DNA of 64,000 nt, taken from positions 62,001-126,000 of IMG/VR virus record IMGVR_UViG_3300032516_000001; one strand, written 5' to 3'. Numbering within the stretch: position 1 is the first letter of the stretch; the number at the start of each line of letters is the position of its first letter. Below the pieces are notes generated by a model that searched no databases, had not been told where the DNA came from, and was given only the letters and a program-made list of their open reading frames with translations. This document shows, one piece after another, positions 13,901-46,584 of the stretch. The translations under genes were made by a program, and so were the position numbers.

Positions 13901-15515
13901 TTAGTCGGGAACCTGGACCGCGACCTGGAGCGGCGGTGTTCCAAAGGACGTTGATATTATATGGAGCGATTGCTACCTGTAACGGATCAGTGACTGATGA
14001 TCCGTTACCTGGAACTTGAACAGCTGCTGAATAGCGTTCGGTAATAACAGAGTCAGACCATGTACGGCGATTGCCGCTTGGGCCATCGAGCCGGCTTAGA
14101 CCGCCAACAAATATTGTGCTGTCGGTAACTCTATCACCATAAAAAACAACTGGGCCAGCCGAAAAAGTTGATCCGAATCGTTTCCATGTGGTGCGCAAAT
14201 TTCCGCGCAAAAGTTCGATCAAATTGGTACGTAAAATTGAATCATAATCAAATTTATCGGCAATTGAATGCCGTAAATCTAGTATATCAGTTAATGTGAC
14301 CTGATCTGAAAATAGTCCGTCAGGTCTAACAGTATATAAGGTAAGCTCCGTCCCTATATTATGTGCTCTGATCGTTGTCTGTAACTGTCCACGATCAACT
14401 GTGACGACATAATTCAAGCCAACCTGGACAACGCTATTTATACGGATTATTTCGTCATCAATTCTAAAATAAGCTTCACCATATGAATTGATCGTAGACA
14501 ATACCGTTCCGGTTATGCTAGCTAGAGTAAATTGTGTATCAACTTCTGCAAATACCGCAGGAAGAGATATGCCGCTTGTAAATTCAGTAGCGTCATTACG
14601 AGTAATGGCAACACTGTTTCGATCGAATGCACCAGCTATATTGCCAACATCTGAAAATCCGGCGCTATTACGTCTGAATACGGCACAAATTGGGATCGCG
14701 TAAACGTACCCATCGACAGTTCCTAAAATCGCCGGATCCCCGGTTCCAGCTCTCCACAAACCGGGGTCGCCCAATTCATTCCGCATATTAGTAAAGCATA
14801 AAGCACTCGGCGCTGATAAAGCTCCTTGAGCGAATACGAGGGTTGAATCAAACCCTTCTGGATATTGTGATATACTGACATTTGGAACTGTCCTAATTCT
14901 ATATTGGATTTGAACCCGCTTTGTAGTCTCATAATTAATGTCAGGGTCTATTAGATCATCGGCGAGATATGAAAATCCGCCTTCGACATTACCAAACCGG
15001 TACAAAAATCCGCGTTGAGGTTTGCCCGGGGATACAGTTGGAGGAGCAGGATCGACATCAATTCTCTGAAGCCAAACCTCGAGGAATGCGAATTCTGCTT
15101 TATTTCCGCCTACTGAATTGTTAGAAGGATTGAGTAATATTTTATTGTGAGTATCAACATTATTTGGGGCTAATGGCGGAGCTCCAGTATTGGTGCCGGT
15201 AACTGGAATGACCCATCCATTTACTATTGCCCAAACAGGATTCCGTGTTTCTCCTGAAGTATTTCTACCGAAATAAAAGAAATTGGATCTATCGGGGTCA
15301 GTATTGAAATCCTCCCGTGGATTGGATTCATTGAGCAACCATCCGGATGGGAAAGTGGAACGTACGGCTTCCGCACGAGCCTCTAATTCCATCAATCCGA
15401 ATAAATTTAATTCTGAATCCAGAGGGGGGCGAGTGGACTCCCATACGACAGCAGCCAGTTGCTTATCGCGACCATCGACATATCGAGAAACACCAGGACC
15501 AAGAGGATTAGGCAT
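10902..15515 (-). CDS. large virion structural protein (tail/baseplate-associated), paralogue of 17394..20051
   Basis: 1537-aa beta/Pro-rich ORF in tail module; shares [20 protein letters not shown] and RPDGLFSDQ blocks with 17394..20051. Confidence 0.7.
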   Translation of the reverse strand: MPNPLGPGVSRYVDGRDKQLAAVVWESTRPPLDSELNLFGLMELEARAEAVRSTFPSGWLLNESNPREDFNTDPDRSNFFYFGRNTSGETRNPVWAIVNGWVIPVTGTNTGAPPLAPNNVDTHNKILLNPSNNSVGGNKAEFAFLEVWLQRIDVDPAPPTVSPGKPQRGFLYRFGNVEGGFSYLADDLIDPDINYETTKRVQIQYRIRTVPNVSISQYPEGFDSTLVFAQGALSAPSALCFTNMRNELGDPGLWRAGTGDPAILGTVDGYVYAIPICAVFRRNSAGFSDVGNIAGAFDRNSVAITRNDATEFTSGISLPAVFAEVDTQFTLASITGTVLSTINSYGEAYFRIDDEIIRINSVVQVGLNYVVTVDRGQLQTTIRAHNIGTELTLYTVRPDGLFSDQVTLTDILDLRHSIADKFDYDSILRTNLIELLRGNLRTTWKRFGSTFSAGPVVFYGDRVTDSTIFVGGLSRLDGPSGNRRTWSDSVITERYSAAVQVPGNGSSVTDPLQVAIAPYNINVLWNTAAPGRGPGSRLNGAAPWWWNGDKIQINIAEFRAGLPVTDSDQVRFILPSEDPDAILIHFEGMTTDPNGGVPFSTTTPTASNPNTPIAGNRILKNGQGIAVSLDGSGNLIIELNSDATIPPVVPATPFQEFGDAVPVIALDTAVSTVMHVEFAVVYGAGRGLSHKPDYIHTAHYRGDPTNSSKVMLRPGLSDRSRLIPTYLNESPCIQTGTNRNLSRTSDMMVDPGSKTIHIAPYRNILVPAVVFRDGNRLNWDPMGNYWGAMPTRDQSGINVVHTTVDPLSLFWNGPGATVYAEIPLNFLPKPGLHHVPIIPVTNAIFPSGINFVLMSKEGPFGASNSSDWNRGLVSYPAATPGYYIVTPVVGETYGTGALPSIFGKKYTNNKLRSVNGGPFKGIQFPPFYAPARITGVYKRSIPALVPTSSPFNLDRVFVGGVGTDVNLLRDDFDGPTFLLDVDVNGDLYFILNSDVIDLTKSTPGTTFDNSEFLIECTLFGFDRGFLETNGRVLNTRDWIIAANDFIDTSDSRVGVIAPAPLSLYATNNEVTIYYSRQPYQGDVFGSQNAYSDDVQRLGPLAISEATSLKLNPLGPVSTLSMPNKVGYEVLTATNFVTSLGTGRLSGSVPIKLLNTVENPNGAPDYTGTLPDLNRRFSLNRVGFEDWVTPKFPVTDASVLTRPSIKRGAMSEIFDRDMNTEFAGCVSHLPLGSYFRDKDFIGKTLYQTRSTSNIGMITQGAISFPPYQAPANPATAGNSTWEGTEFICGQTNGASGAGGEVIIKVDGTSSFSDITKFKTARGGAGWSLTEPWPGGAISSRLPKARPNSEVGSVLVGTAYLVRSQPELFNNIEVHPGHELQMVIVTQATPAYFRDTDILHSANGTNEGFTALDRFRIWGRPIEKRRAQLDVSTATLTDKPLFVNNIYDDPIFYGSSDMNLASLKQELLPITVNGQTVFTLSNRPIDPTTVMLFVRGVKLVYGIDYTVGGITDQTVTYIVSGSNPPLLTTDTLEAWFMLL

Positions 15516-16362: not shown

Positions 16363-17394
16363 TCAACTTGCTCCTATATAGACTTGATGCACCGTGCATT
16401 TCCATTCAAATGAATTTTGAGTTCCTCCTTCGATACCCGCGCACGTGATCGATAAGCATTTATTTGTGTCATCAACATTTAGCACTACAGTGGCCGCAAC
16501 GAGCGCAGCGTCCGTCGAACCTCCGTCGTAGGCTATTGAACCCACAACGTAACACGTTCCACCCATTTGCTTGACGCCAGATCCAATACTCCATGTGGTG
16601 ACTTTGCCAGCGTCAGTTCCACCAAGGCAGACACCAACGAGTTCAACGGGATCATCGTCTATACTAGATCCATAGAGATAGACTTCAGGTGATGAACCAG
16701 GAGTACCAGCGGGACCAGTGTAACCAGTGACGCCATCAGGACCAATGGGACCTGTGTAACCAGTGACGCCGTCAGGTCCAACAGGCCCGGTGGCTCCTGT
16801 AACGCCATCAGCCCCCTGCGGTCCGGTGGCGCCTGTGACACCGGGCAATCCTTGTGGTCCAGTGGAACCAGTAACTCCAGCAGGCCCTGTAACGCCTGTA
16901 ATACCAGGATCTCCCTGTGGACCAGTTATCCCAGTTATCCCGGGGGAACCTTGTGGTCCAGTGGAACCAGTTATGCCTATCGGACCTGTAACGCCATCGA
17001 TCCCTGTGGCACCTTGAGGACCAGTGGCTCCTGTAATACCATATGGGCCAGTTGATCCTGTAACACCATCAATTCCTGTGGCACCTTGAGGACCAGTGGC
17101 TCCTGTAATACCATCAGCGCCCTGTGGCCCAGTGTAACCTGTGACACCATCTGAGCCAGTAGGACCGGTGGCTCCTGTGACGCCATTGGCGCCCTGTGGC
17201 CCAGTATAACCAGTTACGCCTATTGATCCTGTTGGACCAATAACTCCTGTAACACCTTCAGACCCAGTAGCACCTTGAGGACCGACAGGGCCCGTTGAAC
17301 CGCCACCTCCACCACCAGGAGGCCCTGGTTCACCGATAAGGCTACCAGGTCCTGAAACCAGTGCAGGGTTCACTTCACTAAATGGTCGTGGCAT
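16363..17394 (-). CDS. collagen-like (Gly-X-Y) fibre protein
   Basis: about 200 aa of [10 protein letters not shown] triplets plus C-terminal beta domain. Confidence 0.85.
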
Positions 17395-20051
17395 TAGAAC
17401 ACCGTCCTTTGCGGATTAATTAAATGCCCACGCACTCGATAAACGGCAGCAGATGATGAACTCAGTATTGAATTTAATTGAATAGTATTTTGATCATCGA
17501 ATTCCAGCCAATTGGTTAAAATAACTAAAACTAATGTTCCCTTCCTTCCAATGCTTGGCACATCTTCTGCTAGCTCCATTAAAACTGGGGAAGCTACCTT
17601 ATGCCGTTGTTTAGCTGTGAGGAGGTGACCGAATACAACAGGAGAATAAACTGGCGTTACGCCATCATCGGATTTTGGCCAAAAATGCCGACCATCACCA
17701 TCAGTTACAATATCTGGAGCTGATTTGTAGAGAGTTACGATGGCATCTGGAAAATATGGAACTTTGGCATCTAATTTAATAAAGCCAGTATTTATTCCAA
17801 ATCCGATGATGCTAACTGGATTCGGATTATCCAATCTGGATTCTGGGTATGTCGAAGATGGTAGTAACCCGACTGGAATTTGTGCACTCGGTGATTCAAA
17901 TGGAAATGAATCATCAGGACTACCAGATCCACTTGTTATTACATAAATATTGTCCGGATTAGTTCTTGGTATCAAATGAAGAGTTTCAGGAGCCATGCCC
18001 CCGGATGCAGGCAGTAATGATTGAATAGCTCGAGATTGATAAAATACTTGATATGAATCATCCGGTGGTGGTCCAACCATAGGAAGCGGTCGGTAAGCAT
18101 AATAATTAGCTTGTACCCATGGATAGGGCGGACCTGGTGGTACTGGCAAAGGAAAGGTTAATGTTACTTCAGTGTAAGCGGTATTGAATGTGTAATTTGT
18201 AGTTGGATATGGCGGATTTATGCCGTCAGTAATTAAGATTGGATCAGTTATTTTATCGGGGATATAAATATGAATTCCATCGGTACATATACAAGGGTTT
18301 GCTATCATTTCTATTGTTTTAAGTCTAATGAACGCTTCCCTATGGGGTTTATCTATCGCCCATAAGGTGGAATCTAGACTGAATCTGTTTGCATCAGAAG
18401 TAGCCGTAAACAGAGTAGCATCAACAAGTAGCACAGCACCATATAATGCATCGATATCTGCCGCGCTCGGGGTCCACACAGCATGATCATCAATAACGTT
18501 TCTGGATAATCCATTCCCAGCAGGATATTCAATGGCAACTTCTACGTAAATATCTGTAGTTCCGTTATAACTATAACCTGGGGGGATCAAATTTATAGTA
18601 GCAATATCAATCGGACCGCCAGGTACTGATGCCGAGTATTGAATGTCCGATACGCCAGTTCCAGGAATCGGAGACGCAAGCATGTCAATTTCATTCAATA
18701 ACACAGATTGATCTACTAATCTAACTTTATTTACTGATACAATATTGGTCCCTGCTGGCGCAACAGACAACAAGTTGAAAGGCGCAAACCATAACTTAAA
18801 TGCTGACAAATCAACCTGAACGGAAAGTATCGGCCATACTCCGGGCGGCCACGGAAAATGAAAATGACAAACTATAGTTTCGGTTATGCTTCGATCACTA
18901 AAATATTGGCGGACGCCATCAGTGTTTATTATGCTGTCCTGGACAGACAATGATGTGCCACCAGGACCTGCTGGTATTAAAATTTCGTGCTCTGTGGAAA
19001 GTGAGTTATTAAATATTTGCTGCACAGCTTTTTGAATGGTTTCGCCATAATCACGAGCAGAACCTTTGCGAAGATCCTTAATATCGCTAATAATAATTTG
19101 ATCTGAGAATAATCCGTCAGGTCTATCAGATGCACCGGCTACAATCAGTGCGCCGCCATTTATGTTGGTTGTCCTATCATATGCAGTGTTGTTCCGTCGA
19201 AATACGGCACAGATCGGAATAGCATACATATAGCCATCAACAGTGCCTAAAGCAGCAGCATCAACTGCAGTTCCAGTTCCTGCTGCCCAGAGACCGGCAT
19301 CATTCGTAACTGGGGAATAGGTGTATGCCGTTGGAGTACCATCGGCCCCGGGTCCCGTGAAATCCGATACGGTATTGGCTGTTACTGATGGATCATCTAA
19401 CCCATCCGGGTATGTATTCGGATCGATGCCACCAATTACTCGATATCGATATTGAATTTGAACACGAGCACTTGTTTCAGCAGCCTCGGTTGGATCGATT
19501 AAATCATCTGCGAAATTCGGGGTCGTATCAGGGGATTTAACATTCCCATGTCTAAAAATTAAGCCCCCGGCACTTTTATTTGCTACTGATGGAACAGCTA
19601 ATACAAGTGCTCGCCACACTTCTAGAATGACCAAATCAACTCTGTAACTCCCTATACCCACAGGAGGCATGGGGAGATTTATAATATTGGTAGAAGTAGA
19701 ATCTGAGCATTGAAATTTAAGATTCCAGCCATTAACTATTAAATTCTGCGGACTGATTAAAAATATATTTTCGGCCCCTGGTAATGGGACAGGAAAAGAA
19801 TATGCATTACTAATATCTGGACTATCAAGAAAACCAGGATTTATCCAACAGGATGGTAACTGTCTACTATTGGAAAGTCTTACACCATGATCGGAAGTTA
19901 TCTCACTTCGTAAATTCATCTCCCAGTCAATGACTGGTTTGGTCGTTTGGATAACTACCGATTCAAAGGATTTCTCTTCACCGGAGAATTGATCTCCAGG
20001 CATTCCTTGTGGGAGTTGACTAACACCAATACCAAGGTTCTTGTATGCCAT
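17394..20051 (-). CDS. virion structural protein, paralogue of 10902..15515
   Basis: shared blocks VNGW, LEVW, ADDLIDP, RVQIQYR, GLWx[33 protein letters not shown]. Confidence 0.7.
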
Positions 20052-20196
20052 GGGTCAAATTGACTTCTGTATAAGAGCTGGAATAATAAACATTACCGAT
20101 ATTAGATCCTAGATAAATAAGATCCGATTCGGATAATCGCCAATTTACGTCAAATTGCAATTGCAATTGAAAATTCAAAACTAACAACCGGGAGCA

Positions 20197-20394
20197 CTAA
20201 TCTTCCATTACTGATTCTATTATAGTCTGATCGCAATCCTTAATGGGTCTTTCATTCTGGTTTATGGGATAATCTGACATTTGTCCGCATCTATCACAGA
20301 TTAATACGCCTCCAGTTTCCTGATATGAACTAGTATCGATTTTTATATATATGTCACTCCCGCAATACCTATATAACCGCCATTGATGTGCCAT
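20197..20394 (-). CDS. small hypothetical protein with CxxC (start probably MAHQW at 20394)
   Basis: ICDRCG motif; the ORF-track start at 20424 lies inside the post-tmRNA hairpin, so the downstream ATG is preferred. Confidence 0.5.
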   Translation of the reverse strand: MAHQWRLYRYCGSDIYIKIDTSSYQETGGVLICDRCGQMSDYPINQNERPIKDCDQTIIESVMED

Positions 20395-20407
20395 ATCTAA
20401 ATAAAGC

Positions 20408-20452
20408 GACGAGGCGCTGACCATTGGGGGGAGGACGGATCAGCGCCTCGTC
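20408..20452 (-). terminator. stem-loop directly after the tmRNA CCA end (terminator or processing hairpin)
   Basis: 13-bp perfect stem GACGAGGCGCTGA/TCAGCGCCTCGTC followed by GCTTTATTT on the minus strand. Confidence 0.7.
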
Positions 20453-20791
20453 TGGTGGACCCGGGGGTATCGAAACCCCGTCCGCAAAGTTCCGAATTCG
20501 TCTTCTACGTGCGTATCTGGTGAGACTGCACCAGCACAATATCGCCGAAGCGCGACTCCATCACCTGCTGTTTCTCATCCTATGTCGCAGGAATTCATAG
20601 GACCAGTTCGTGTACTCACGCCAGTAGCACTACTCGAACTCCTCATGCTACCAACGGCGTCACGGTTTCTTAGGCCGCGACGCGAACAGCATTGTCATTC
20701 GCTGCTATTGGTTGCTTGCTTGGTCATGGCAGGGCAAGCACTGCCAGCACGCAGACGTCTTCTTCCCTCCACGTCGAAACCTGTCGGGCCC
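20453..20791 (-). ncRNA. ssrA: tmRNA (339 nt), tag peptide ANDNAVRVAA* at 20702..20670
   Basis: 5' GGGCCCGACAGGTTTCGAC pairs with 3' CGGGTCC-A-CCA with G3.U70 Ala determinant; T-arm GGGGTTTCGATACCCC; pk1 TGGCAG/CTGCCA + TGCTTG/CAAGCA; helix 2 TGCGTGC/GCACGTA; tag ORF GCG AAT GAC AAT ... GCG GCC TAA. Confidence 0.95.
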
Positions 20792-20794
20792 TTT

Positions 20795-22564
20795 CTAACA
20801 TAACTTACAATCAAAACCCGAAACAGTTACATTCCGTTTTAACATGAACTTGATTTTTTCTTTACCAAATGACTTGTGATAATTATGCTTATCTGCATAT
20901 TCCTTTTCTTTCATACTCATTTTACATGCCCTGTTATACAATGTCTTCTTGTGTAATATGAACCCGTCTTCCCCGATATAATAATAATCTGGACGAACTA
21001 TTCCTATTTGATCCCAATTTGCAGCTTTGTATATGGTCCCAAAATGACCATAGGTTTTATCAGCGAATGAAACTAGACACACAATCTTACCAAAATTCGG
21101 ATCTTGGAAAATAGACCTGGAAATTCTGGATAGAAACCAAGAAGCGAAATTCTTCTTCTGATATCCAGGGTGTATGCAAAAACGATCAAGTTCCAAAACT
21201 TGTCTCGGATTTATATTCATGGAAGTGGCCACTTCCTCTCGTATTACAGACGAAAACTTACATATGGCAATGCATTGTGATTCAAGAAAAGCCCCGTATA
21301 TTATTTTTGAAGACCTCCCGAAAGCAGCATAATGATATGAGTTTAGGAAATCTACAGCATCACCAGCATTAACTGTAAAAATTCTGATGTCTGATAAATT
21401 GAATTGTTTCTGCTCAATTTCTGGTTCATGGCCGACAATGAAGTTATTGATCTTTGATGTGATGGCATGTGGATTGGAAAATTCATGTTCATACAAATAC
21501 AAAATTCTTGCAGATGGATCAAATTTCTCTAAATAAGTATACTTGGATGCATCTCTACACTGTCTATTAGGCAATGAGTGCCAATATTCCCCTTGACATT
21601 CTATGTATACATTATGATCGGGTAAGAAATAATCAAATAAATATGGCCCGATTGGAACCTGAGATTTATGTTTGATTTGCACACTATTAAGAATTAACTC
21701 AGTAATTTTCTCGATAGACGATTTTCTACCCATTTGAGCAGATCGGATCTTACCCATTTTTTCTCGAAATTTATCATCTTTCCATAATTCCTTACTTTGC
21801 AATATCTTCAATTCTCTATATTCCGGATCTTGCCATCTTCTCTTCAATCCAGAAACCACGGAATCTCTATATTCTGAATTATTCCATTTATTTTTTGCTG
21901 CTTTACAAGCTTTTATCTGAAATTCTGGATCTTGCCATTTGGTCTTAGCTATATTCGATAATTTAGTTTTATATTCTTCGGTCCGCCAAAGATCTTCGTA
22001 GTGTTTTCTATACTCTGGATCTTGCCATCTATCTTTTTGAAGCGTTTTTTGATGATCTTTATACCCTTCCCTTTGCCAAACCGATTTCTGTTGTTTAGAT
22101 TGATTATCTCGATATTCTTCATTTTGCCAAATCAGTGTTTGTTGTTTGGATTGATTATCTCGATATCCTTCTCTCTGTACAACTAACTTTTGTTTTTCTG
22201 ATTGTCCTGTTCTAAATTCTTTTGTTTTAAATTTTCTTTGATTTTCTATATATTCCGGAGTCTGCCACAAGTCTTTTTTTACTTTGATCTGATTTTCTCT
22301 AAATTTCGGATTTTCCCATAGTTCTTTAGTTCTATCAGACAATTGTTTTCTTCGTTCATCAGTATATACACGTTTCCTATTACACACACTGCATAATAAA
22401 ATACCACGTCTTTTAAGTCTCGCTTTTAAGCACAGAATTGATGTTATGATTGTGACATCACAATCATAACATCTTATTATAACATTTGATGAGTTATTCT
22501 GAGGCTGGCCAAACTGTGCTAAGGTCAAATCCCAAACAATATGTTCTTTTATATTTAATTCCAC
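20795..22564 (-). CDS. fusion protein: CxxC..CxxC + 17-aa W..PEYR repeats + Vsr/DUF559-like endonuclease + Mom-like GNAT DNA-modification domain
   Basis: SSIE...FDYFLPDHNVYIECQGEYWH...RDASK (Vsr/DUF559 pattern); FLNSYHY, VLELDRFC, NFASWFLSR, LVSFADKTYGHFGTIYKAANW (Mom-family pattern). Confidence 0.75.
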   Translation of the reverse strand: MELNIKEHIVWDLTLAQFGQPQNNSSNVIIRCYDCDVTIITSILCLKARLKRRGILLCSVCNRKRVYTDERRKQLSDRTKELWENPKFRENQIKVKKDLWQTPEYIENQRKFKTKEFRTGQSEKQKLVVQREGYRDNQSKQQTLIWQNEEYRDNQSKQQKSVWQREGYKDHQKTLQKDRWQDPEYRKHYEDLWRTEEYKTKLSNIAKTKWQDPEFQIKACKAAKNKWNNSEYRDSVVSGLKRRWQDPEYRELKILQSKELWKDDKFREKMGKIRSAQMGRKSSIEKITELILNSVQIKHKSQVPIGPYLFDYFLPDHNVYIECQGEYWHSLPNRQCRDASKYTYLEKFDPSARILYLYEHEFSNPHAITSKINNFIVGHEPEIEQKQFNLSDIRIFTVNAGDAVDFLNSYHYAAFGRSSKIIYGAFLESQCIAICKFSSVIREEVATSMNINPRQVLELDRFCIHPGYQKKNFASWFLSRISRSIFQDPNFGKIVCLVSFADKTYGHFGTIYKAANWDQIGIVRPDYYYIGEDGFILHKKTLYNRACKMSMKEKEYADKHNYHKSFGKEKIKFMLKRNVTVSGFDCKLC

Positions 22565-22583
22565 ACATAACTATACATTCGAA

Positions 22584-23246
22584 CTATGAACTTACGCGCC
22601 AGGTCCATCCAAGAGTACTTGTCGCTGGTTTATTTATAACTTTGAACGTGACGTAATTAACTAATGCGTCTTTCACCCTAACGTCTACAGTTGGATCATA
22701 TAACCCATTAGGTGGTAATATCGGATTTGTAATCGCCATATTCGTATCAATATCGCCGCCAAGTAATCCCATTTCTACCAATGGACCAACCGCTTCTGAT
22801 TCCGCAAATATTGTAGTGTAATCAACTACATTAGTCGGTTTTGCACTAATAGCCCCAAAGCTATCAATAAAATTAGATGTGGCGACTTGCTTGCGTCCTA
22901 TTTCATCATAAAGGGACCGTTGAGTAGGCTGACCGGATGGTGGGTTCATTGGATCCCAACCAACATCGCCGATCCCAACAGCCAAAGCATAAATTCCAAA
23001 TTTTGGCTCCGATACATTAGCCACCACTCCAGATTTCAGGAGCCTGGCAACTAATATACTAGCATCAATAGTAATGACATTCGTTATGTGACCTTGATCT
23101 TGGATTTCTCCGGTTTTCCCATCCCGCATAACCCAAAATACTTCACCTCTAAGTGATGGTATGCGTTCATGGCCATTGAAATGCATATTCATTCTCAAAT
23201 CCGAGTCAACACATTTGCGAATTTGTTCCTTCATCATACTAGTCAT
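22584..23246 (-). CDS. tail/baseplate structural protein (fibre-anchor type)
   Basis: AVGIG...SLYDEIGRK...FAESEAVGPLVEMGL...TFKVINK...WTWRV pattern typical of myovirus tail-fibre attachment domains. Confidence 0.6.
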   Translation of the reverse strand: MTSMMKEQIRKCVDSDLRMNMHFNGHERIPSLRGEVFWVMRDGKTGEIQDQGHITNVITIDASILVARLLKSGVVANVSEPKFGIYALAVGIGDVGWDPMNPPSGQPTQRSLYDEIGRKQVATSNFIDSFGAISAKPTNVVDYTTIFAESEAVGPLVEMGLLGGDIDTNMAITNPILPPNGLYDPTVDVRVKDALVNYVTFKVINKPATSTLGWTWRVSS

Positions 23247-23249
23247 CCA

Positions 23250-26200
23250 TCACAAAATCTTGAAAATTGATACCACAGGATTAGAGGCAGTTGGTGGTAA
23301 AAACAACAAAGGAGGCGTCCAGGGATTCACATATATTGAACCATTAAGCGTAAAATGAGTTGGATCAACAAACGTAATAACCCAACTACCGTTCGCTTCA
23401 ATTGTACCAATTACATTCATAATTATGATAGTATATCCTGTTAGAAATCCATGAGCGGAGGTTGTTTCAATTTCGACCTCTCCCCCATTATTGGCTGTAC
23501 CAATGATTTCTTTACCCATTGTACCCACAACCGTATATGCCTTGGGAGCTGTTACGAAATTGGAAGTATTGGTTAAACCTATTGATGGCGATGGCAACAA
23601 TGGTGTAGGACCCCAAGTAAATACTCTACGATTTTTGATTACTGGTGGATAATACGCTTCTGTTGGTGGTACGGGACGTGTTACAATAACCCCGCCACTC
23701 ACCCAAGGATTTATATACGCTGAACCATTAAGTGTAAAATGGGTTAACCCCCACAGACCTGGGGCGACTGTTATATCCCAATCACCATTTGCTTCGATTG
23801 TACCAAGTACATCAGTAATTGTAATATGATAACCAGTTGTAAGTTTATGTGGACTTGCTGTCTCAATTTCAATTTCTCCCCCACTATTATCCGTACCTAT
23901 GACATATAAAGTTTGATTGATATTCCAATGAATCCAATAGGTTTCATCATCAGATATTGGATGGAGATGACCAACATCCCCAGTTGCAAATTGCCAGAAT
24001 TTTATATTATCATATAGAACTCGAGATGGTGGATCTATTCTGATGAATATTGATGAACCATGAACTCCAGGCTCTACTCTATGAGCCTCATATCTGATTT
24101 TAATCTCGTTTGATAAAGTAACTAATGTAGCTGGATCCGAAGCATCTGGGGATATGATAATATTAGTTAAGTCATCGTTGGTATGAATTTTTTGAGTCTC
24201 TTTAATAATTCCAGATATGTGTTCATTGAACATCAATTTAGAAACATTAGCTAAATCAATGGCCGTGAGAAGATTGGAAGCTGGTGCTGGTAGAACAATA
24301 TTAAGTATATCATTAGCAAGATGCACTCTATACTGAATAACATGTAATAGATATTTGATCCTAAATTCATTCAAAATATCTATAGATGTTAATAGATCAA
24401 TCGCTACCGGAGAGATCATTATATTTGATGTATCGTCCTCGAGATCAGTAATATACCCACGTGTATTAATTAAATCTATGGACGAGATTATGTCCAAAGG
24501 TGTGGCAGTTTTCCTTAATCCACCACGTGATTGAAGATCCTGAGTCATCGGAACAGGGACAGTGTCCTCATATAATTCTGTATACGAAGATACTGTCTCA
24601 TCGGCCATGAAGTCATCTACCGGAGTTCCACCTGAATATACCTTAAATCCGAAATGTGGATGGACAACTTGGGTTCTCAAGTGATCTGGCGATACTACGA
24701 CATTGGCTTGATTTAAAACCTGATGAGGAATGATCATTCTTTCATTTAGTGTTATCTTTCCGATCGAATATCTAAGATATGACCATCGAGTCCTCGATAT
24801 TTCTTCAGGATCAAAGCTGCCGAATGAAATTGTAGGTTGTCCATAAACAATCGGACTTATGAAACTAGATGAGAATGGCGGCAATCTCAAAACATCATAT
24901 GATGCTGATATGACCGGGACTGCTCCACCATCTACATAAATAGATAATGAGCTGACTGGGTCTCTTACTATTCTATAAATGTGCGAAGACGTCCAGTCTA
25001 TTTGATGCAAATAGTATGAGCTTAAAAGAGTAGTGTCTCCTCCTCTGTAAATGCCGATATATCTACGACTAGCGGCAGTCAGATCATTAATCTTACTATC
25101 TCTAAATATGGCAATTGATTCCCAATCCACTACAGACTTGGCAGCTCGCATGTCAGAACTAGCAAGCTGATCACTACCAGACCCAAATGAAATGGATGCA
25201 GTTGATACACCAGAATTTAACCCAGAATACGTTGGTGCTGGGCCAAGGGCTGTCAGCGGTAATCCATCAGCATATACATAAACATTATCGATAACTTTCG
25301 AAGTGTAAATATTGAATGTATGAATTTGTCCGTCATTCCATGCAAATGCATACTGAGCCATTACATCTAATGCATCCGTAAATGAGTTATATGATGCTAA
25401 ATTCAAATATTGATCATTTGTAACTGGATCCATCATCAACTGTAATTCAGCATTTTTACCACCGGTACCTTCATTAACAAATATTAGAGCCCCCGCAAAT
25501 CTTAAAGTCAGCAGTGGACCGAGAGCCGGTATCCAATCCCCAGGAACGAATGATTTGACAGTAAGTCTTGCATCCAATTTCCAGTCAACGCTTGGACCAA
25601 ATGCTGGAGTAGTAACTAGCGTATCTGATTGGGTATACGCTAAATAATCAGATGTACTCGAATCGGTAATTCTGAGAACACGTCCCAGCATCGTAGATAA
25701 CTGAGTGCCAGAAACCGCCCACGGTTGACTATCTAGATCTGGTCTGTTAGCCCCAAACCATGAAACTTTTGGTTCCGGATTAGAATCCAACCCCAAATAA
25801 ATGCCGGGACTAAACCCTAATTTTGCAAGAGCACTTCCTTGCACAATTTCAAAACTAGCAGTGACGCCTAGATTTGCAGAAGTGAGTTTAATTTTTCCAC
25901 CATCGTCACTAGCAAATGCAAATCCGACATCCGGATGAATGTTTATTCTTGCTACAACAGCTGCAGCTGTTGTATCACCAGCCTGAAATATAATATTTAC
26001 GTCCGGACCATTATTGATTCTGATAACTAACAAGTCACCAAGAATAATTGTGAATAATTCATGGGCCGTTCCTAGGGTCGTTGCCGCTGATGGGGAATAC
26101 TGTAGGAAAGCGAACTGAATCGAAAAATCTTTATCATCTATGAATAACCCGGCAGACTTGTTGCTCAGCCCAAATGTGTAATAATCAACACTGGTCTGAA

Positions 26201-28652
26201 ATTCGATACTAGAAGCCGTGTCAACGGATAAAATGGGTTCCAAACGTGTATAACCACGATAAGCACCAGAGCTCAACCCCAATGCTGATATCTCAGCATC
26301 GGCTGCTTTGGCTGTTGAATCCAATAATAGAATATCACCCGGTAAGATTCTTTCATGTCCGCCTTGACCGATAGTCATCCAGGGAGCAGTCGGGTCTAAT
26401 TCCGGAATAACTGATGCTGCATAATCGACAAATTTATTGTCCTCAATTAAATTTGCATCTAACGGAGTCAAATTGGCGTATACAAGTTGCCATTTACTTA
26501 TCGATTTGGCATCTCTACCAATCGACCCGAAGAAAATTTGCTGTATCGGATCAAATTTACCATCTATATCAGATATGGCTGGGAGATCTATAACGTCAAC
26601 TTGCACGACTGGAAACACGCTAGCACTTAAATATAGAGACGCGTTACCACTCGGATCACGATAAATTCTATACGATTTGTATTCCGTCCAATCGGTAGCA
26701 TATGATTCCCATGCACTGTCGAATTCAGCATAATTTCTATTGGTCAAAATACCAACTTGTTTAACTTGTTCAACGCTATTTACTGTATCCTCAACAAAAT
26801 GCACCCCAGTTTGTTCACGATGTGCATTGAATTTAGTTCTAAGTTCATTCACTAAACCGATGGCTGTTGTTAAATTTGAAGCATTAGTTGACATAATGGG
26901 ATTCGTTATATCAACCAACTGATGTATTAGGCCTGCCCCACTCCCTTTTGCAATATGGGAATTGAATGTTGACTTTATACTATTCAGTAATATTACTAAT
27001 GATGTTAAATTAGTAGCATCAACGATAGGAATATAGCTACCAACATCATTTGGTTCATGCGATCCGATGTTAGTTAAATGAGCTTCGAATTTAGCTCTTA
27101 TATCATTAGCCATAACTATAGATGACGAGAGATTTGTAGCATCGGTTATGATGAATCCTACAATAATTACTTTTCTGCCATCAGAAATACCAAGAGATAC
27201 GCCAGTTGCCACTCCATCTGGAGTATATTCGCCAATTTTGACTCTAAAAGCAGCCGATATGACACTAGATGTCTCAATTTCAATATCATGAGTAAAGAAT
27301 GGGGGCATACTGTCCGCCCCCGTTTGAATATTCGAGTCAGTTATCATTAGCTCTGTCCCGCCGGAGGCAAGAGACAACACCCCATCACCTTCCAAAATCC
27401 ACGGATCGACTGCATTTTGAGGGAGCGTTGCTGGAATGTATCTAATGATAACTTCCGATATTTTTTGTGATAGAACTGGGAATGTCAATTTATTGATCGG
27501 AACATTTAACAATAAAGTAGTAGGATCATTCAGAGCGGCTGTATATGCGCGCTCATATCCCTTATATTTCCATCCGATTTTCCTAGGTTGGAAAGCAGAA
27601 ATTAAATCTGGAGTATGCCCTGGATTTATTAAATAAGATCTACAACGATATTTATGCTGTGGATAACCACAATAGTTCTTGTTGCCGTCTTGATTGAGAC
27701 AAAACTCTGGGGTGTTCAATCTCAAAAATCGAGCAGGAGGATTACTTATCCAGTCATAATCAACTGTTACAATATCTCCAGAATTTGGTTTAACGGACAA
27801 TACTATGGCTCCGAGCAAGCCAAATACAACATCAACAGCAACTGGATTTCCATTGACATAAGCTCGAACATCTGTTGGGTCATCTGCCACGGTGCCAAGA
27901 CGTGGATTTTGTAATGTCCAAGTTAATGGACCAGTAAGTAGACTCGGATAAGTGTCTGTCACTATTATTATTCTGGGAAGCGTGATGCGATTGATCATAT
28001 CGTCGTCAACATGAAAGTATCTATTCTTTCTATGGGTTTCGTATTTGCTCAAAATTTCATTCGCCAGAACCACAGCATCTTTTAATTGAGTGGCATCGTG
28101 TGCAGTAATAACTTTTCCTGTCAATGGATCAACGTCATCTTCGAATTTATGAACTGGTGGCGTTCCAGATATCATTATTGCATGTGCATTGAACTGAACT
28201 TTGATATCATTTAATAAATCAATAGAAGTGAGTAAATCGATAGCAATTGGCTTAGTTGTTATATTAGTCGTATCATCTGTACCATGAACGCCAGATTCTA
28301 TTCTGTGTTTGTTATAGTTATCTCTAAGAGTGTTTGCCATTGCCACAACCTTAGTAGTTGTAGCAGCAGGATCTGACGTATCTAAATTAGCATTGCGAAG
28401 AGTTAAACGGGTTGGACTACTAATATCAACAGTAAATGTTCCATCATTTCTGGCACCATCACTACCAGAAATTACTAGAAAGTATTCATTATATGCTGAA
28501 GTAAAACTGCCAGTTGGGACCTCAACTTCAGTCTCGGATATGACCTTAAGATTGGCTCCGGTAAGTATATCTAACGGTCTTTTTACAATGGGACCTTTGT
28601 TAGTGAATACGGTGCGGTCCCAAACGGAAGATAGACCAGTAAAAGCAACCAC
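23250..28652 (-). CDS. 1800-aa virion structural protein with three clusters of His-pair helical repeats and two C-terminal FCCH-like beta domains
   Basis: 9 copies of LxNxxxxx[FY]xxHx6-12HxxxD; duplicated ETxxxHxxxTGxxIxIxxVxGTIEANGxW domain. Confidence 0.75.
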   Translation of the reverse strand: MVAFTGLSSVWDRTVFTNKGPIVKRPLDILTGANLKVISETEVEVPTGSFTSAYNEYFLVISGSDGARNDGTFTVDISSPTRLTLRNANLDTSDPAATTTKVVAMANTLRDNYNKHRIESGVHGTDDTTNITTKPIAIDLLTSIDLLNDIKVQFNAHAIMISGTPPVHKFEDDVDPLTGKVITAHDATQLKDAVVLANEILSKYETHRKNRYFHVDDDMINRITLPRIIIVTDTYPSLLTGPLTWTLQNPRLGTVADDPTDVRAYVNGNPVAVDVVFGLLGAIVLSVKPNSGDIVTVDYDWISNPPARFLRLNTPEFCLNQDGNKNYCGYPQHKYRCRSYLINPGHTPDLISAFQPRKIGWKYKGYERAYTAALNDPTTLLLNVPINKLTFPVLSQKISEVIIRYIPATLPQNAVDPWILEGDGVLSLASGGTELMITDSNIQTGADSMPPFFTHDIEIETSSVISAAFRVKIGEYTPDGVATGVSLGISDGRKVIIVGFIITDATNLSSSIVMANDIRAKFEAHLTNIGSHEPNDVGSYIPIVDATNLTSLVILLNSIKSTFNSHIAKGSGAGLIHQLVDITNPIMSTNASNLTTAIGLVNELRTKFNAHREQTGVHFVEDTVNSVEQVKQVGILTNRNYAEFDSAWESYATDWTEYKSYRIYRDPSGNASLYLSASVFPVVQVDVIDLPAISDIDGKFDPIQQIFFGSIGRDAKSISKWQLVYANLTPLDANLIEDNKFVDYAASVIPELDPTAPWMTIGQGGHERILPGDILLLDSTAKAADAEISALGLSSGAYRGYTRLEPILSVDTASSIEFQTSVDYYTFGLSNKSAGLFIDDKDFSIQFAFLQYSPSAATTLGTAHELFTIILGDLLVIRINNGPDVNIIFQAGDTTAAAVVARINIHPDVGFAFASDDGGKIKLTSANLGVTASFEIVQGSALAKLGFSPGIYLGLDSNPEPKVSWFGANRPDLDSQPWAVSGTQLSTMLGRVLRITDSSTSDYLAYTQSDTLVTTPAFGPSVDWKLDARLTVKSFVPGDWIPALGPLLTLRFAGALIFVNEGTGGKNAELQLMMDPVTNDQYLNLASYNSFTDALDVMAQYAFAWNDGQIHTFNIYTSKVIDNVYVYADGLPLTALGPAPTYSGLNSGVSTASISFGSGSDQLASSDMRAAKSVVDWESIAIFRDSKINDLTAASRRYIGIYRGGDTTLLSSYYLHQIDWTSSHIYRIVRDPVSSLSIYVDGGAVPVISASYDVLRLPPFSSSFISPIVYGQPTISFGSFDPEEISRTRWSYLRYSIGKITLNERMIIPHQVLNQANVVVSPDHLRTQVVHPHFGFKVYSGGTPVDDFMADETVSSYTELYEDTVPVPMTQDLQSRGGLRKTATPLDIISSIDLINTRGYITDLEDDTSNIMISPVAIDLLTSIDILNEFRIKYLLHVIQYRVHLANDILNIVLPAPASNLLTAIDLANVSKLMFNEHISGIIKETQKIHTNDDLTNIIISPDASDPATLVTLSNEIKIRYEAHRVEPGVHGSSIFIRIDPPSRVLYDNIKFWQFATGDVGHLHPISDDETYWIHWNINQTLYVIGTDNSGGEIEIETASPHKLTTGYHITITDVLGTIEANGDWDITVAPGLWGLTHFTLNGSAYINPWVSGGVIVTRPVPPTEAYYPPVIKNRRVFTWGPTPLLPSPSIGLTNTSNFVTAPKAYTVVGTMGKEIIGTANNGGEVEIETTSAHGFLTGYTIIIMNVIGTIEANGSWVITFVDPTHFTLNGSIYVNPWTPPLLFLPPTASNPVVSIFKIL

Positions 28653-34200: not shown

Positions 34201-36132
34201 TCCTTGCGGGCCGGTCGGACCTGTTGCCCCATCTGGACCTGTAACTCCAGTGACTCCAGGACTACCCTGTGGGCCAGTAGCTCCAGTGACGCCAGTAACT
34301 CCATCGATTCCAGTTGCTCCGATAGGGCCTGTTGCTCCTACTGGTCCAGTTGCACCTGTAACTCCATCAACACCAGTGGCTCCGATAGGACCGGTAGATC
34401 CAGTTACGCCATCGATACCGGTAGCGCCCTGTGGGCCAGTCGATCCCGTGACTCCATCGATACCGGTCGCGCCAATTGGCCCTGTCGGTCCAGTCGCACC
34501 TGTGACGCCATCGATCCCTTGAACACCAGTGGCGCCTATTGGGCCAGTCGCTCCTGTAACGCCATCAATTCCTGTGGCACCTTGTGGTCCTGTCGATCCT
34601 GTAACTCCATCTATACCAGTCGCGCCAATCGGCCCGGTTGGACCAGTAGCTCCTGTAACTCCATCGATTCCTTGAACCCCGGTCTCGCCTTGAGGACCGG
34701 TCCAACCCGTCTCACCAGCTGGTCCCGTTGGTCCAGTAGCGCCTGTAACACCGTCTATACCAGTTGCTCCTTGAACACCAGCCCCTGTAGCACCTGCCGG
34801 TCCCGTCGCTCCGGTAACACCAGCTATTCCTGTAGCACCTTCAGCACCGGCAGGTCCTGTGGGTCCCATTGGGCCTTCCGGACCAGTAGGACCTATTGGC
34901 CCGGTAACTCCATCAGGACCTGCCGCTCCTTGTGGTCCTGTAACGCCTGTAACGCCAGTATAGCCTGCTGGTCCTGTCGGTCCGGGCGCGCCTGTAACAC
35001 CGTCCGCGCCTGTTGCGCCTTGGATCCCATCGGGTCCGGTTGCTCCTGTAACTCCGTCGTTACCTGGTAACCCTTGGACGCCGGTTTCACCTTGTATACC
35101 TGTGACACCATCTGGTCCCGTTGCACCTGTAATGCCTGGTGATCCTTGGGGACCAGTTGCTCCTGTTACACCAGGACCCCCCTGCGGACCTGTTGAACCA
35201 GTAACACCTTGTGGTCCTGTAGCGCCGGTTCCCCCTTTCGGTCCCGTTGATCCGAAAATTCCTTGTGAACCTGTGGCCCCACGCGGCCCGGTTGATCCTG
35301 TGACACCGGTTGCACCTTGGGGGCCTGTAACTCCTATACCCGTAGCCCCTTGCGGGCCAGTTCCACCTTGTGGGCCAGCAGGACCAGTAACCCCCTGCGG
35401 TCCCGTAGAACCAGTAACCCCCTGCGGTCCTGGAGGACCACCAAATGGTCCAGTAGCTCCTGTAATCCCATCTGGTCCAATTGCGCCAGTTACACCAGGT
35501 GATCCCTGTGGACCGGCAGTACCAGTTGCGCCATCAGGGCCGGTGGCTCCTGTGACTCCAGGCGATCCCTGCGGTCCTGTAGCTCCGATAGTTCCATCAG
35601 GTCCCGTTGCGCCTGTAACACCTGGGGATCCTTGAACACCTTGGGGCCCCGTAGAACCAGTAACCCCCTGCGGTCCTGGAGGACCACCAAACGGTCCAGT
35701 AGCGCCTTGTGGTCCGGTGGGACCAGTAGTCCCTGTGACACCAATAGGGCCCGTTGATCCTGTAACTCCAGGAGATCCTTGTGGTCCGGTGGCTCCAGTA
35801 ATACCGGGACTACCTTGCGGTCCCACCGGACCAGTATGGCTTGAAATATCAAATGCAAATTGTGATAAACCGCCGGCAGTCAATACGTGGGTTACAATTG
35901 ATCCGAATGTATGAGCTGCGGCAAGTGTACCCTCTATATGTCTAACAATATCAAATACATTGCCGGCTACCCCGGTAACGAGCATTAACTCATTATCTAT
36001 TTTAATACGGAATTGAGGTAACGGAGGAAATAATGCAGCACTGGCAACTGTAACACTAAGAGCAACTGGACTTATACCGCCCAGTTGATCTATGGTCGTC
36101 TGTGCTGTGTTTGCGAAACGTTCGGTAGGCAT
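31222..36132 (-). CDS. giant collagen-like fibre protein with internal LamG/concanavalin A-like domain
   Basis: about 1000 aa Gly-X-Y; then FSISLWVK...WHHCVVTY...FYIDG...[12 protein letters not shown]...LVAWWRM (LamG); second collagen block; C-terminal beta domain. Confidence 0.88.
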
Positions 36133-46302: not shown

Positions 46303-46584
46303 CTACGGTTTGAAATTTTTTAATACCTCTCTGTAATTTTTGATTTGATCTTCTGTTTGTTTGATACTTCCCTCAACGCTTTCCTTCAATATAGTTAATA
46401 ATTCCATCATCTGATTATTCGACACCTTTTGATTATGCGCCCATTTTGGTTTTACAAACTCTTCACTATTAATAATTTCTGCTGATTTGCTGCTATTTGT
46501 GTTAGACTGGTCTGGCGTGTCAACTCCGCTCTCACTTTCCTGACCAGTGATCCGTACTCCCGATTTGTTCTCTGTTGAATCCAT
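46303..46584 (-). CDS. small coiled-coil hypothetical protein (start uncertain)
   Basis: C-terminal heptads fill the 46303-46451 gap; GAGGT upstream of ATG 46584; overlaps upstream gene by 133 nt. Confidence 0.45.
   Translation of the reverse strand: MDSTENKSGVRITGQESESGVDTPDQSNTNSSKSAEIINSEEFVKPKWAHNQKVSNNQMMELLTILKESVEGSIKQTEDQIKNYREVLKNFKP

What the first reader, a model, noticed from the sequence alone, without database searches (positions are those of the whole stretch)
20453..20791. Phage-encoded tmRNA embedded in tail-fibre genes, 3 nt after a nuclease/Mom gene
Seen: complete single-piece tmRNA with encoded CCA, G3.U70, pk1 and tag ANDNAVRVAA. The C-terminal AA fits the ClpXP degron, but the usual aromatic/LA positions are replaced by VRV. 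The T-arm is 16 nt, one short of canonical. It has no room for an intergenic promoter (upstream stop at 20795), so it is probably processed from the fusion gene's mRNA and ended by a 13-bp hairpin. Inference: it backs up ribosome rescue against host anti-phage RNases, or retunes tagging.
Basis: partly seen in the sequence, partly recalled or inferred. Interest (0 to 1): 0.65.

Follow-up and report, generated by a model that had tools for sequence, protein, structure and literature searches.

The report
Relocated tmRNA gene in huge phage
A giant bacteriophage carries its own complete copy of the ribosome-rescue RNA (tmRNA); phage tmRNAs are already known, but this one has moved from its usual place into the tail-fibre genes next to a selfish nuclease gene, and its degradation tag and T-loop are unusual.

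Summary
ARAGORN and Rfam RF00023 (106 bits, cut-off 47) call a full-length one-piece tmRNA at 20453-20791 (-). It has tag ANDNAVRVAA, G3.U70, an encoded CCA, pk1, a T-arm of only 16 nt, a 3-nt gap after the upstream stop codon and a 13-bp hairpin. The window is part of a 241.6-kb IMG/VR phage contig.

New findings:
- The tmRNA, a multi-copy nuclease-Mom gene and about 400 nt of flank form a 2.5-kb insertion between two tail genes. Those two genes abut in a complete 393-kb relative.
- Two complete relatives keep their tmRNA (tags ANDNAIRAAA, ANDNASLAIAA) elsewhere, close to suppressor tRNAs. The matching region of this phage has only an ochre suppressor tRNA.
- The lineage groups with Polyangia-type (Myxococcota) tmRNAs, whose tags end in ALAA. 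Phage copies keep the terminal AA but change the protease-recognition positions.
- No SmpB gene occurs in this contig or in the complete relatives.
- 32 of 48 helix pairs covary across 14 sequences, and this copy keeps every helix. Its 6-nt T-loop is unique among 80 distinct tmRNAs compared.

Phage tmRNAs are already documented, so this is a new member of a known kind. Expression could not be tested.

The parts
20453..20791 (-). One-piece tmRNA gene (339 nt, 56% GC in a 42% GC genome), with encoded CCA
   Evidence: ARAGORN; Rfam RF00023 106.1 bits, full length; 32 of 48 consensus pairs covary across 14 related tmRNAs
20717..20746 (-). Pseudoknot pk1 (stems UGGCAG/CUGCCA and UGCUUG/CAAGCA)
   Evidence: Read from the sequence; the second stem is predicted with compensatory changes (columns 57-61/82-86)
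20670..20702 (-). Tag reading frame GCG...GCC UAA encoding ANDNAVRVAA plus stop
   Evidence: closest tags are ANDNAIRAAA (relative G001) and ANDNAVALAA / ANDNAIALAA (Polyangia)
20464..20479 (-). Atypical T-arm: 5-bp stem GGGGU/ACCCC with a 6-nt loop UUCGAU (16 nt instead of 17)
   Evidence: the only such case among 80 distinct tmRNAs compared; one search shows the one-base gap against all 13 aligned relatives
20408..20452 (-). 13-bp perfect hairpin followed by a U-rich tract; probable terminator and 3'-processing signal
   Evidence: dG -31.4, z -6.6; inverted repeat I9
20795..22564 (-). 589-aa fusion gene: Cys-rich N-terminus, about ten 17-aa W-x-[DN]PE[YF]R repeats, a weak PD-(D/E)XK (DUF559/MTES_1575-like) nuclease motif, and a C-terminal Mom-like domain. 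It belongs to a multi-copy family and is probably a selfish element
   Evidence: Pfam Mom 4e-20; PHROG Mom-like, homing endonuclease and HNH families; PDB 8bv8 Mu Mom 7.9e-5 and DUF559 3e-3, below cut-off; 4 strong paralogues (E 8e-53 or better, this gene included) plus weaker matches in this contig; 70 loci in IMG/VR, several per genome
20052..22583 (-). 2.5-kb insertion relative to the closest complete relative: nuclease-Mom gene, tmRNA, hairpin and about 400 nt of flank
   Evidence: In G001 the homologues of the 220-aa and 885-aa genes lie 8 bp apart (L003 9993 and 10001). G002 has 1.6 kb of unrelated small ORFs in the same slot. No flanking direct repeats
20197..20424 (-). 75-aa ORF whose ATG lies in the hairpin loop; doubtful gene
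   Evidence: No Pfam or PHROG hit; no homologue in relatives
22584..23246 (-). 220-aa tail-module gene bordering the insertion upstream
   Evidence: 55-61% identical homologues in G001 and G002; phrog_5417; weak hit to a baseplate-wedge tail-fibre-network family
17394..20051 (-). 885-aa structural-module gene bordering the insertion downstream
   Evidence: 45-48% identical homologues in G001 and G002; followed by a collagen-like tail-fibre gene at 16363-17394

Best explanation
This is a genuine and probably functional tmRNA (ssrA) gene of a huge phage. It belongs to a tmRNA lineage shared by this phage clade and related to Polyangia-type (Myxococcota) bacterial tmRNAs. In two complete relatives the tmRNA lies in the early tRNA region, 0.6-4.4 kb from opal suppressor tRNAs. 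In this phage that region keeps only an ochre suppressor tRNA. The tmRNA now lies about 67 kb away, inside a 2.5-kb insertion in the tail-fibre module, directly behind a multi-copy nuclease-Mom gene of the homing-endonuclease type. Inferred mechanism: RNA polymerase transcribing the late structural block and the nuclease-Mom gene runs straight into the tmRNA. Host RNase P then cuts at G1, 3 nt after the stop codon. The 13-bp hairpin ends the transcript, and host exonucleases trim back to the encoded CCA. Host AlaRS charges the RNA through G3.U70, and host SmpB and EF-Tu deliver it to stalled ribosomes, since no phage SmpB gene was found. Translation resumes at GCG and adds ANDNAVRVAA. The tag keeps the terminal AA but replaces the bacterial A-L at positions -4 and -3 with R-V, so proteolysis of tagged products is probably altered. 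The likely benefit is extra ribosome-rescue capacity during infection, including rescue of non-stop complexes caused by the phage's own suppressor tRNA. Shown here: the gene, its structure, the insertion, the changed position, the multi-copy neighbour, the absence of SmpB and the tag pattern. Inferred: transcription, processing, charging, function and benefit.
For: Identity. Structural constraint: 32 of 48 consensus pairs have compensatory changes among 14 tmRNAs, and our copy keeps every helix; for example the acceptor stem is GGGCCCG/CGGGUCC against GGGGGUG/CACCUCC in G001 and G003, with G3.U70 kept. Phage origin: the contig is a 241.6-kb virus record, the window is one co-directional block of giant structural genes, and the identical arrangement occurs in a second contig. 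Insertion: the genes abut in G001; different content in G002. Ancestral position: G001 and G003 have tmRNAs at 67 kb and 76 kb, and their flanks map to 10.7-24 kb of our contig, which holds a tRNA(UUA) but no tmRNA remnant. Mobile neighbour. No SmpB in this contig or in three complete genomes that share the nuclease-Mom family, two of them tmRNA-bearing relatives. Polyangia-type affinity: (clade SH-aLRT 93, also with the tag columns removed). Tag divergence in phage copies. Suppressor read-through is a documented source of non-stop complexes handled by tmRNA (Ueda 2002, as cited in PMC8012679). Phage tmRNAs are documented (PMC7162821 and PMC4131195).
Against: The T-loop is one base short, unique among 80 distinct tmRNAs, and might impair folding, modification or SmpB/EF-Tu binding. 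The contig is only about 57% complete, so SmpB or a second tmRNA could lie in the missing part. The ML trees do not resolve whether this copy is orthologous to those of G001 and G003 (moved) or was re-acquired from another phage or bacterium. No promoter could be identified. Genome GC (42%) is far from that of Polyangia (about 70%), so the host is unknown and the tag cannot be compared with the true host's tag.
Confidence: 0.6

Rival explanations
1. The gene is a decaying passenger. It was carried into the tail module by recombination associated with the nuclease-Mom element and is no longer functional, with the one-base loss in the T-loop as the first lesion.
For: The 6-nt T-loop is unique. 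The position is derived and sits next to a selfish gene. Some huge phages that share the nuclease-Mom family lack a tmRNA, for example G005 (complete) and the incomplete G002 and G004.
Against: All other elements are intact: acceptor stem with G.U, CCA, pk1, the resume context AAUAGCA-GCG, an open 10-codon tag ending in AA plus stop, helix 5, and a strong terminator. The Rfam score equals those of the relatives and of Polyangia genes (104-112 bits). A U-A pair can close a 5-bp T-stem, so the arm is still stable.
Confidence: 0.17
2. The RNA acts as an inhibitor or decoy rather than a rescuer. It would bind host SmpB (or AlaRS/EF-Tu) and damp host trans-translation, as proposed for the TLD-only ssrA of mycobacteriophage DS6A.
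For: No phage SmpB, so it must compete for host SmpB. The atypical T-arm could make it a poor substrate but still a binder. There is a precedent in PMC4131195.
Against: A decoy needs only the tRNA-like domain, yet the whole mRNA-like domain, the pseudoknots and an open tag frame are kept. The tag start ANDNA and the terminal AA are kept in all 13 ANDNA-selected phage tags, including those of both relatives, G001 and G003.
Confidence: 0.1
3. It is not phage-encoded: either a host ssrA at a prophage junction, a chimeric assembly, or a partial ssrA copy serving as an attachment site.
For: ssrA is a classic integration site, and the gene is GC-richer (56%) than its surroundings.
Against: The gene is complete and flanked on both sides, for more than 20 kb, by co-directional phage structural genes with homologues in DTR-bounded complete phage genomes. 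The same junctions occur in an independent contig. No exact tag of this type exists in 185,579 bacterial species genomes. No family scan of the neighbouring genes returned an integrase.
Confidence: 0.03

Closest known systems
tmRNA genes of huge phages (Al-Shayeb et al. 2020, PMC7162821) and of Bacillus phage G and Bxz1-like mycobacteriophages (Hudson et al. 2014, PMC4131195)
   Same: A complete one-piece tmRNA encoded by a large lytic-type phage genome that also carries other translation-related RNAs. It is detected by the same tools (ARAGORN and a covariance model).
   Different: Some huge phages also encode SmpB, whereas this clade has none in its complete genomes. This copy lies in the late structural module inside an insertion next to a nuclease-Mom gene, not in the tRNA region. 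The tag is short (10 aa) with R at -4, and the T-loop has 6 nt.
tmRNAs of the two complete relatives: G001 (IMGVR_UViG_3300012980_000004, 393 kb) and G003 (IMGVR_UViG_3300028920_000001, 427 kb)
   Same: Same phage clade: tail genes are 45-64% identical between this phage and G001, and G003 shares synteny around its tmRNA. The G001 tag has the same length and an Arg at -4 (ANDNAIRAAA). The tag plus helix-5 segment is 86% identical to G001 over 50 nt. None of the three encodes SmpB.
   Different: Their tmRNAs lie in the early region, 0.6-4.4 kb from opal suppressor tRNAs, and have canonical 5-bp/7-nt T-arms. The acceptor stems differ by three compensated pairs. G001 lacks an encoded CCA and is 403 nt long.
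Chromosomal ssrA of Polyangia (Sorangium, Polyangium, Chondromyces, Labilithrix; Myxococcota)
   Same: 10-residue tags ANDNA[I/V/L/Y]ALAA with the same frame and start; about 73% identity over RNA positions 11-138; the same helix-5 sequence; similarly low Rfam scores (about 104 bits); and the same ML clade, with SH-aLRT 93.
   Different: The bacterial tags end in A-L-A-A, whereas ours ends in R-V-A-A. Bacterial genomes are about 70% GC, this phage 42%. The bacterial T-arms are canonical.
Free-standing homing-endonuclease genes beside tRNA genes in T4-like phages (for example segB in the T4 tRNA cluster; from my own knowledge)
   Same: A selfish nuclease gene lies next to a small stable RNA gene, and the pair shows presence/absence polymorphism between related phages.
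   Different: Here the nuclease part is only weakly supported (DUF559-like, below cut-off) and is fused to a Mom-like DNA-modification domain. Homing has not been shown, and none of the other 70 loci of this family has a tmRNA within 10 kb.

Membership tests
tmRNA (Rfam RF00023, one-piece) | Covariance-model score above the curated threshold over the full model | tested here: met
   106.1 bits against a gathering score of 47, model positions 1-374, E 1.8e-40 (repeated)
tmRNA (Rfam RF00023, one-piece) | tRNA-like acceptor stem of 7 bp with G3.U70 (alanine identity), discriminator A and a 3' CCA | tested here: met
   GGGCCCG/CGGGUCC, G3.U70, ACCA encoded
tmRNA (Rfam RF00023, one-piece) | T-arm of tRNA type (5-bp stem, 7-nt UUCGAnn loop) | tested here: inconclusive
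   The stem and the UUCGA core are present, but the loop has 6 nt (or 4 bp plus 8 nt). This is unique among 80 distinct tmRNAs. Whether this form works cannot be decided from sequence.
tmRNA (Rfam RF00023, one-piece) | mRNA-like domain: Ala resume codon with a conserved upstream context, and a short open frame ending in AA plus stop | tested here: met
   AAUAGCA-GCG resume context; ANDNAVRVAA-UAA
tmRNA (Rfam RF00023, one-piece) | Pseudoknot pk1 before the resume codon, and the long helix 2 joining the two domains | tested here: met
   Both pk1 stems were read from the sequence. Helix 2 and one pk1 stem are supported by compensatory changes.
tmRNA (Rfam RF00023, one-piece) | Expressed, processed, charged with alanine, bound by SmpB, and able to tag proteins | not testable with these tools
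Phage-encoded tmRNA (as opposed to host ssrA at an integration junction) | A complete gene flanked on both sides by phage genes in a viral genome | tested here: met
   241.6-kb virus record; flanking structural genes are syntenic with DTR-bounded complete phages; an independent identical contig exists
tmRNA-SmpB pair encoded together by a huge phage | An SmpB gene (PF01668) in the same genome | tested here: not met
   No match in this contig at E<=1 or in the complete genomes G001, G003 and G005 at E<=0.01. Our contig is only about 57% complete.
Mom-like DNA modification enzymes (PF25680) | A Mom domain above the Pfam threshold | tested here: met
   72.8 bits against a cut-off of 27.1, residues 393-562; PDB 8bv8 Mu Mom E 7.9e-5. 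Catalytic residues were not checked.
Homing endonuclease (HNH or PD-(D/E)XK type) | A recognisable nuclease catalytic domain | tested here: inconclusive
   The PHROG 'HNH/homing endonuclease' families match along the whole protein. Pfam gives only sub-threshold DUF559/MTES_1575 hits at residues 296-349 (E 3e-3). The multi-copy distribution fits a selfish element.

The most novel reading that the evidence does not exclude
In this huge-phage clade, suppressor tRNAs and the tmRNA form one functional module. The phage would drive stop-codon read-through in the infected cell (opal suppressors in the relatives, an ochre suppressor here). It would rescue the resulting non-stop ribosomes with its own tmRNA, whose tag has lost the host-type A-L-A-A protease signal, so that rescue is uncoupled from, or redirected in, proteolysis. 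In this reading the tmRNA gene is itself mobile cargo, moved into the late operon by a nuclease-Mom selfish element, which shifts its expression to late infection.
Probability: 0.12. Interest if true: 0.6.

Novelty: new member of a known kind. Interest (0 to 1): 0.3.

Why it matters
Phage-borne tmRNAs have been catalogued but never explained. This locus offers three concrete handles on the question:
- A natural relocation experiment. The same tmRNA lineage lies in the early tRNA region in two relatives and in the late tail module here, which gives a way to ask when during infection the RNA is needed.
- A comparative pattern. Phage copies keep the rescue-relevant parts and the terminal AA, but change the tag positions that proteases read. 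This points to rescue without normal degradation.
- A physical association with suppressor tRNAs. This suggests a reason for phages to need extra rescue capacity.

None of this changes the classification. It is an ordinary, already known kind of gene in an unusual place.

Tried and rejected
- BLASTN ('distant' mode) of the tmRNA against 50,697 GenBank phage records found no match.
- The exact tag type ANDNA[V/I]R[V/A]AA found nothing in 185,579 bacterial species genomes.
- Sigma-70 promoter scan: 13 sites against 13.3 expected by chance, so it is uninformative.
- k-mer enrichment in 82 upstream regions of the contig gave no promoter motif.
- Shine-Dalgarno usage as a host clue: weak (26% against 11% in the control) and not decisive.
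- Stop-codon recoding: rejected. Code 11 gives 86% cover by ORFs of 150 aa or more, and all three stop codons are used.
- High-GC island at 33-36 kb as foreign DNA: rejected. It is the collagen-repeat part of a tail fibre.
- Direct repeats flanking the insertion: none found.
- Homology of the 400-nt right flank or of ORF75 to anything in the contig or in relatives: none found.
- BLAST of the tmRNA against phylum samples: too insensitive (8 of 301 Myxococcota, 1 of 401 Pseudomonadota).
- Global pairwise identity does not discriminate between donors.
- Integration-site and prophage-junction readings were rejected (see the rival explanations).
- One genome (G834) is unpublished.

Full report
**1. 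Observation**

ARAGORN reports a single tmRNA in the window, at 20453-20791 on the minus strand, with tag ANDNAVRVAA. Rfam's tmRNA model RF00023 matches the same coordinates end to end (106.1 bits, gathering score 47, E 1.8e-40).

- The acceptor stem is 7 bp, GGGCCCG/CGGGUCC, with G3.U70, discriminator A and an encoded CCA.
- There is an H-type pseudoknot pk1 (UGGCAG/CUGCCA and UGCUUG/CAAGCA).
- The resume codon GCG is preceded by AAUAGCA.
- The tag has ten codons and ends in AA followed by UAA.
- The upstream ORF stops at TAG 20797-20795, so only AAA separates it from G1.
- A perfect 13-bp hairpin begins 2 nt after the CCA (dG -31.4 kcal/mol, z -6.6).
- The T-arm is GGGGU-UUCGAU-ACCCC, 16 nt. 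Among 82 phage and bacterial tmRNA sequences parsed in the same way (80 distinct), 78 have the canonical 5-bp stem with a 7-nt loop, and ours is the only one with a 6-nt loop.

**2. Where it lies**

The window is bases 62001-126000 of a 241,648-bp IMG/VR virus record that CheckV rates about 57% complete. This is therefore a huge phage with a full genome of roughly 400 kb.

All but one of the 32 large ORFs (90 aa or more) found in the window are on the minus strand. They include collagen-like tail fibres (16363-17394 and 31222-36132), a baseplate-hub-like protein, and many giant proteins with no family match. The tmRNA is therefore inside the late structural block.

The upstream gene (20795-22564, 589 aa) has four parts:
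- a Cys-rich N-terminus;
- about ten 17-residue W-x-[DN]PE[YF]R repeats;
- a sub-threshold PD-(D/E)XK (DUF559/MTES_1575-like) motif;
- a C-terminal Mom domain (Pfam 4e-20; Mu Mom structure 8bv8, 7.9e-5).

PHROG families annotated as HNH or homing endonuclease match along its whole length. The contig holds four strong paralogues (E 8e-53 or better, this gene included) and several weaker matches. Seventy loci in IMG/VR huge phages encode relatives, often several per genome. That distribution is what one expects of a selfish, mobile gene. None of the other 70 loci has a tmRNA within 10 kb. Two further free-standing HNH genes interrupt the same structural block.

**3. The locus is an insertion at a derived position**

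Two contigs encode real relatives of the flanking tail genes, at 45-64% amino-acid identity: G001 (393 kb, direct terminal repeats, complete) and G002 (182 kb).
- In G001 the homologues of the 220-aa and 885-aa genes are 8 bp apart. Window 20052-22583, holding the nuclease-Mom gene, the tmRNA, the hairpin and about 400 nt of flank, is therefore an insertion.
- G002 has 1.6 kb of unrelated small ORFs in the same slot, so the junction is a variable spot.
- No direct repeats flank the insertion.

G001 and a third complete genome, G003 (427 kb), do carry tmRNAs, but elsewhere.
- G001 holds its tmRNA at 67 kb (tag ANDNAIRAAA) and G003 at 76 kb (tag ANDNASLAIAA).
- The genes flanking both of those tmRNAs have their homologues at 10.7-24 kb of our own contig.
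- That region of our contig contains a suppressor tRNA(UUA) but no tmRNA or remnant of one.

The position shared by the two relatives is thus the ancestral one, and our copy lies about 67 kb from it. The trees do not resolve whether it moved or was lost and re-acquired. The tag plus helix-5 segment is 86% identical to G001 over 50 nt.

**4. Is it under constraint?**

RNAalifold on 14 tmRNAs (ours, G001, G003, four other phage copies and seven Polyangia genes) predicts 48 pairs. Of these, 32 have at least one sequence with a compensated double change. Our copy keeps all helices. Its acceptor stem differs from those of G001 and G003 at three pairs, all compensated, and G3.U70 is retained. The only blemish is the missing T-loop base. 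No SmpB gene occurs in our contig or in the complete genomes G001, G003 and G005, so the RNA must use host SmpB.

**5. Origin**

No bacterial species genome holds a tag of the exact type. A broader, structure-anchored pattern (tRNA-like domain, helix 2 and an ANDNA tag start) hit almost only Polyangiales (Sorangium, Polyangium, Chondromyces, Labilithrix). Their tags are ANDNAIALAA, ANDNAYALAA, ANDNALALAA and ANDNAVALAA, with the same length and frame as ours.

That pattern pre-selects such sequences. To reduce the circularity I added 120 Rfam-detected tmRNAs drawn evenly from four phyla and built ML trees.
- Ours, G001, G003 and eleven other IMG/VR phage tmRNAs fall in one clade with the Polyangia sequences and five of the unbiased Myxococcota sample (SH-aLRT 93).
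- None of the 90 sequences from the other three phyla falls inside that clade.
- The result holds with the tag columns removed.

Only four phyla were sampled and the inner branches are weak, so this is a lead, not a proof. The host remains unknown. Our clade has 37-49% GC against about 70% for Polyangia, whereas the other ANDNA-tag phages have 55-65% GC.

**6. The tag**

Within that clade, bacterial tags end in [A/V][L/V/M]AA in 68 of 69 cases. The 13 phage tags all keep the terminal AA, but only 5 have A or V at position -4 and only 6 have a hydrophobic residue at -3. Examples are RVAA, RAAA, AKAA, AQAA and RQAA. Fisher's test on distinct tags gives p = 6e-4 and p = 0.013, without correction for relatedness.

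Established work places ClpXP, ClpAP and Lon recognition in this part of the tag (reviewed in PMC8012679). The pattern therefore fits altered or relaxed coupling of rescue to proteolysis.

**7. Link to suppressor tRNAs**

The suppressor tRNAs of the clade are homologous to one another: opal (UCA) in G001 and G003, ochre (UUA) here. In G001 two of them lie 0.6-1.3 kb upstream of the tmRNA. The genome is not recoded. Read-through by suppressor tRNAs is a documented source of non-stop complexes dealt with by tmRNA (Ueda 2002, cited in PMC8012679). That gives a plausible reason for the two genes to be kept together. It is an inference.

One curiosity follows: the tag's own stop codon is UAA, the codon our phage's suppressor reads. 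Read-through would add ETVTPLVA before a UGA.

**8. Most likely mechanism**

The gene is probably transcribed by read-through from the nuclease-Mom gene and the late operon, since there is no spacer and no terminator between them. RNase P would then cut at G1. The transcript would end at the hairpin, be trimmed to the CCA and be charged by host AlaRS. Host SmpB would take it to stalled ribosomes. A promoter inside the 3' end of the upstream ORF cannot be excluded; the scans were uninformative.

**9. Comparison with what is known, and verdict**

Phage tmRNAs have been listed for Bacillus phage G and the Bxz1-like mycobacteriophages (PMC4131195). They are also reported, together with SmpB, for huge phages from metagenomes (PMC7162821). 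This locus is a new member of that known kind.

Its particular features are of moderate interest:
- its position inside an insertion in the tail module, next to a selfish nuclease-Mom gene;
- the loss of the tmRNA from the ancestral site close to a suppressor tRNA;
- the R-V-A-A tag ending;
- the 6-nt T-loop.

Rival readings are less likely:
- A decaying passenger gene.
- An SmpB-titrating decoy, like the TLD-only ssrA of phage DS6A.
- A host or chimeric origin, which is nearly excluded.

I score interest at 0.3.

Noticed in passing
G000:C1:15604-15679 (+), outside the window (L115:6605-6680): An ochre suppressor tRNA (anticodon UUA; Rfam tRNA 64 bits). It is homologous to opal suppressor tRNAs (UCA) that lie 0.6-4.4 kb from the tmRNAs of relatives G001 and G003. 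The genome shows no stop-codon recoding (86% ORF cover under code 11, all three stops used).
   Followed up: partly
window 20643-20672 (-): The tag frame stops at UAA, the codon read by the phage's own suppressor tRNA. Read-through would extend the tag by ETVTPLVA before a UGA stop. The two relatives combine a UAA tag stop with opal suppressors, so they have no such overlap.
   Followed up: no
window 20795-22564 (-); paralogues at G000:C1:55275-56525, 134788-135306, 163253-163834 and weaker matches: The nuclease-Mom fusion is a multi-copy family: 4 strong paralogues (this gene included) plus weaker matches in this contig, and 70 loci in IMG/VR huge phages, up to four in a single genome. The N-terminal parts vary and contain 17-aa W-x-DPEYR repeats (51-nt DNA repeats at 21812-22326). 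It looks like a selfish DNA-modifying or homing element family of huge phages.
   Followed up: partly
window 33001-36000, within ORF 31222-36132 (-): A 57-60% GC island in a roughly 40% GC genome. It is the collagen-like Gly-X-Y repeat region of a 1636-aa tail-fibre protein (PHROG tail fibre, 1e-272), not foreign DNA.
   Followed up: yes
window 42417-43388 (-) and 62362-63156 (-): Two further free-standing HNH / endonuclease VII-like genes interrupt the structural gene block.
   Followed up: no
L004:8397-10000 (relative G002): In G002 the slot between the 220-aa and 885-aa gene homologues holds five small unrelated ORFs (67-145 aa) instead of the nuclease-Mom gene and the tmRNA. This junction is a hot spot for variable cargo.
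   Followed up: partly
window 6516-10859, 10902-15515, 23250-28652, 46452-51842, 55158-59897 (all -): Five proteins of 1447-1800 aa have little or no family assignment: three returned no PHROG hit, the 1537-aa one only a weak PHROG tail-protein hit, and the 1800-aa one only a sub-threshold Pfam hit. Only the three scanned were also run against Pfam. The 1537-aa and 885-aa proteins share a homologous N-terminal region of about 300 aa.
   Followed up: no
IMG/VR loci L090-L110 (other phage contigs): At least eleven other viral contigs (55-65% GC) carry Polyangia-type tmRNAs with ANDNA... tags, several of them at the end of arrays of 12-23 tRNA genes. Their tags also depart from the bacterial ALAA ending (AKAA, AQAA, RQAA, GLAA).
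   Followed up: partly
window 22440-22473: A perfect 16-bp palindromic hairpin (2-nt loop) lies inside the 5' part of the nuclease-Mom ORF, in the region coding for the Cys-rich N-terminus.
   Followed up: no
window 1256-4369 (-): A 1037-aa protein combines a terminase-large-subunit-like / DnaC-like ATPase N-terminal part with a helicase C-terminal part (PHROG 62, 6e-70).
   Followed up: no
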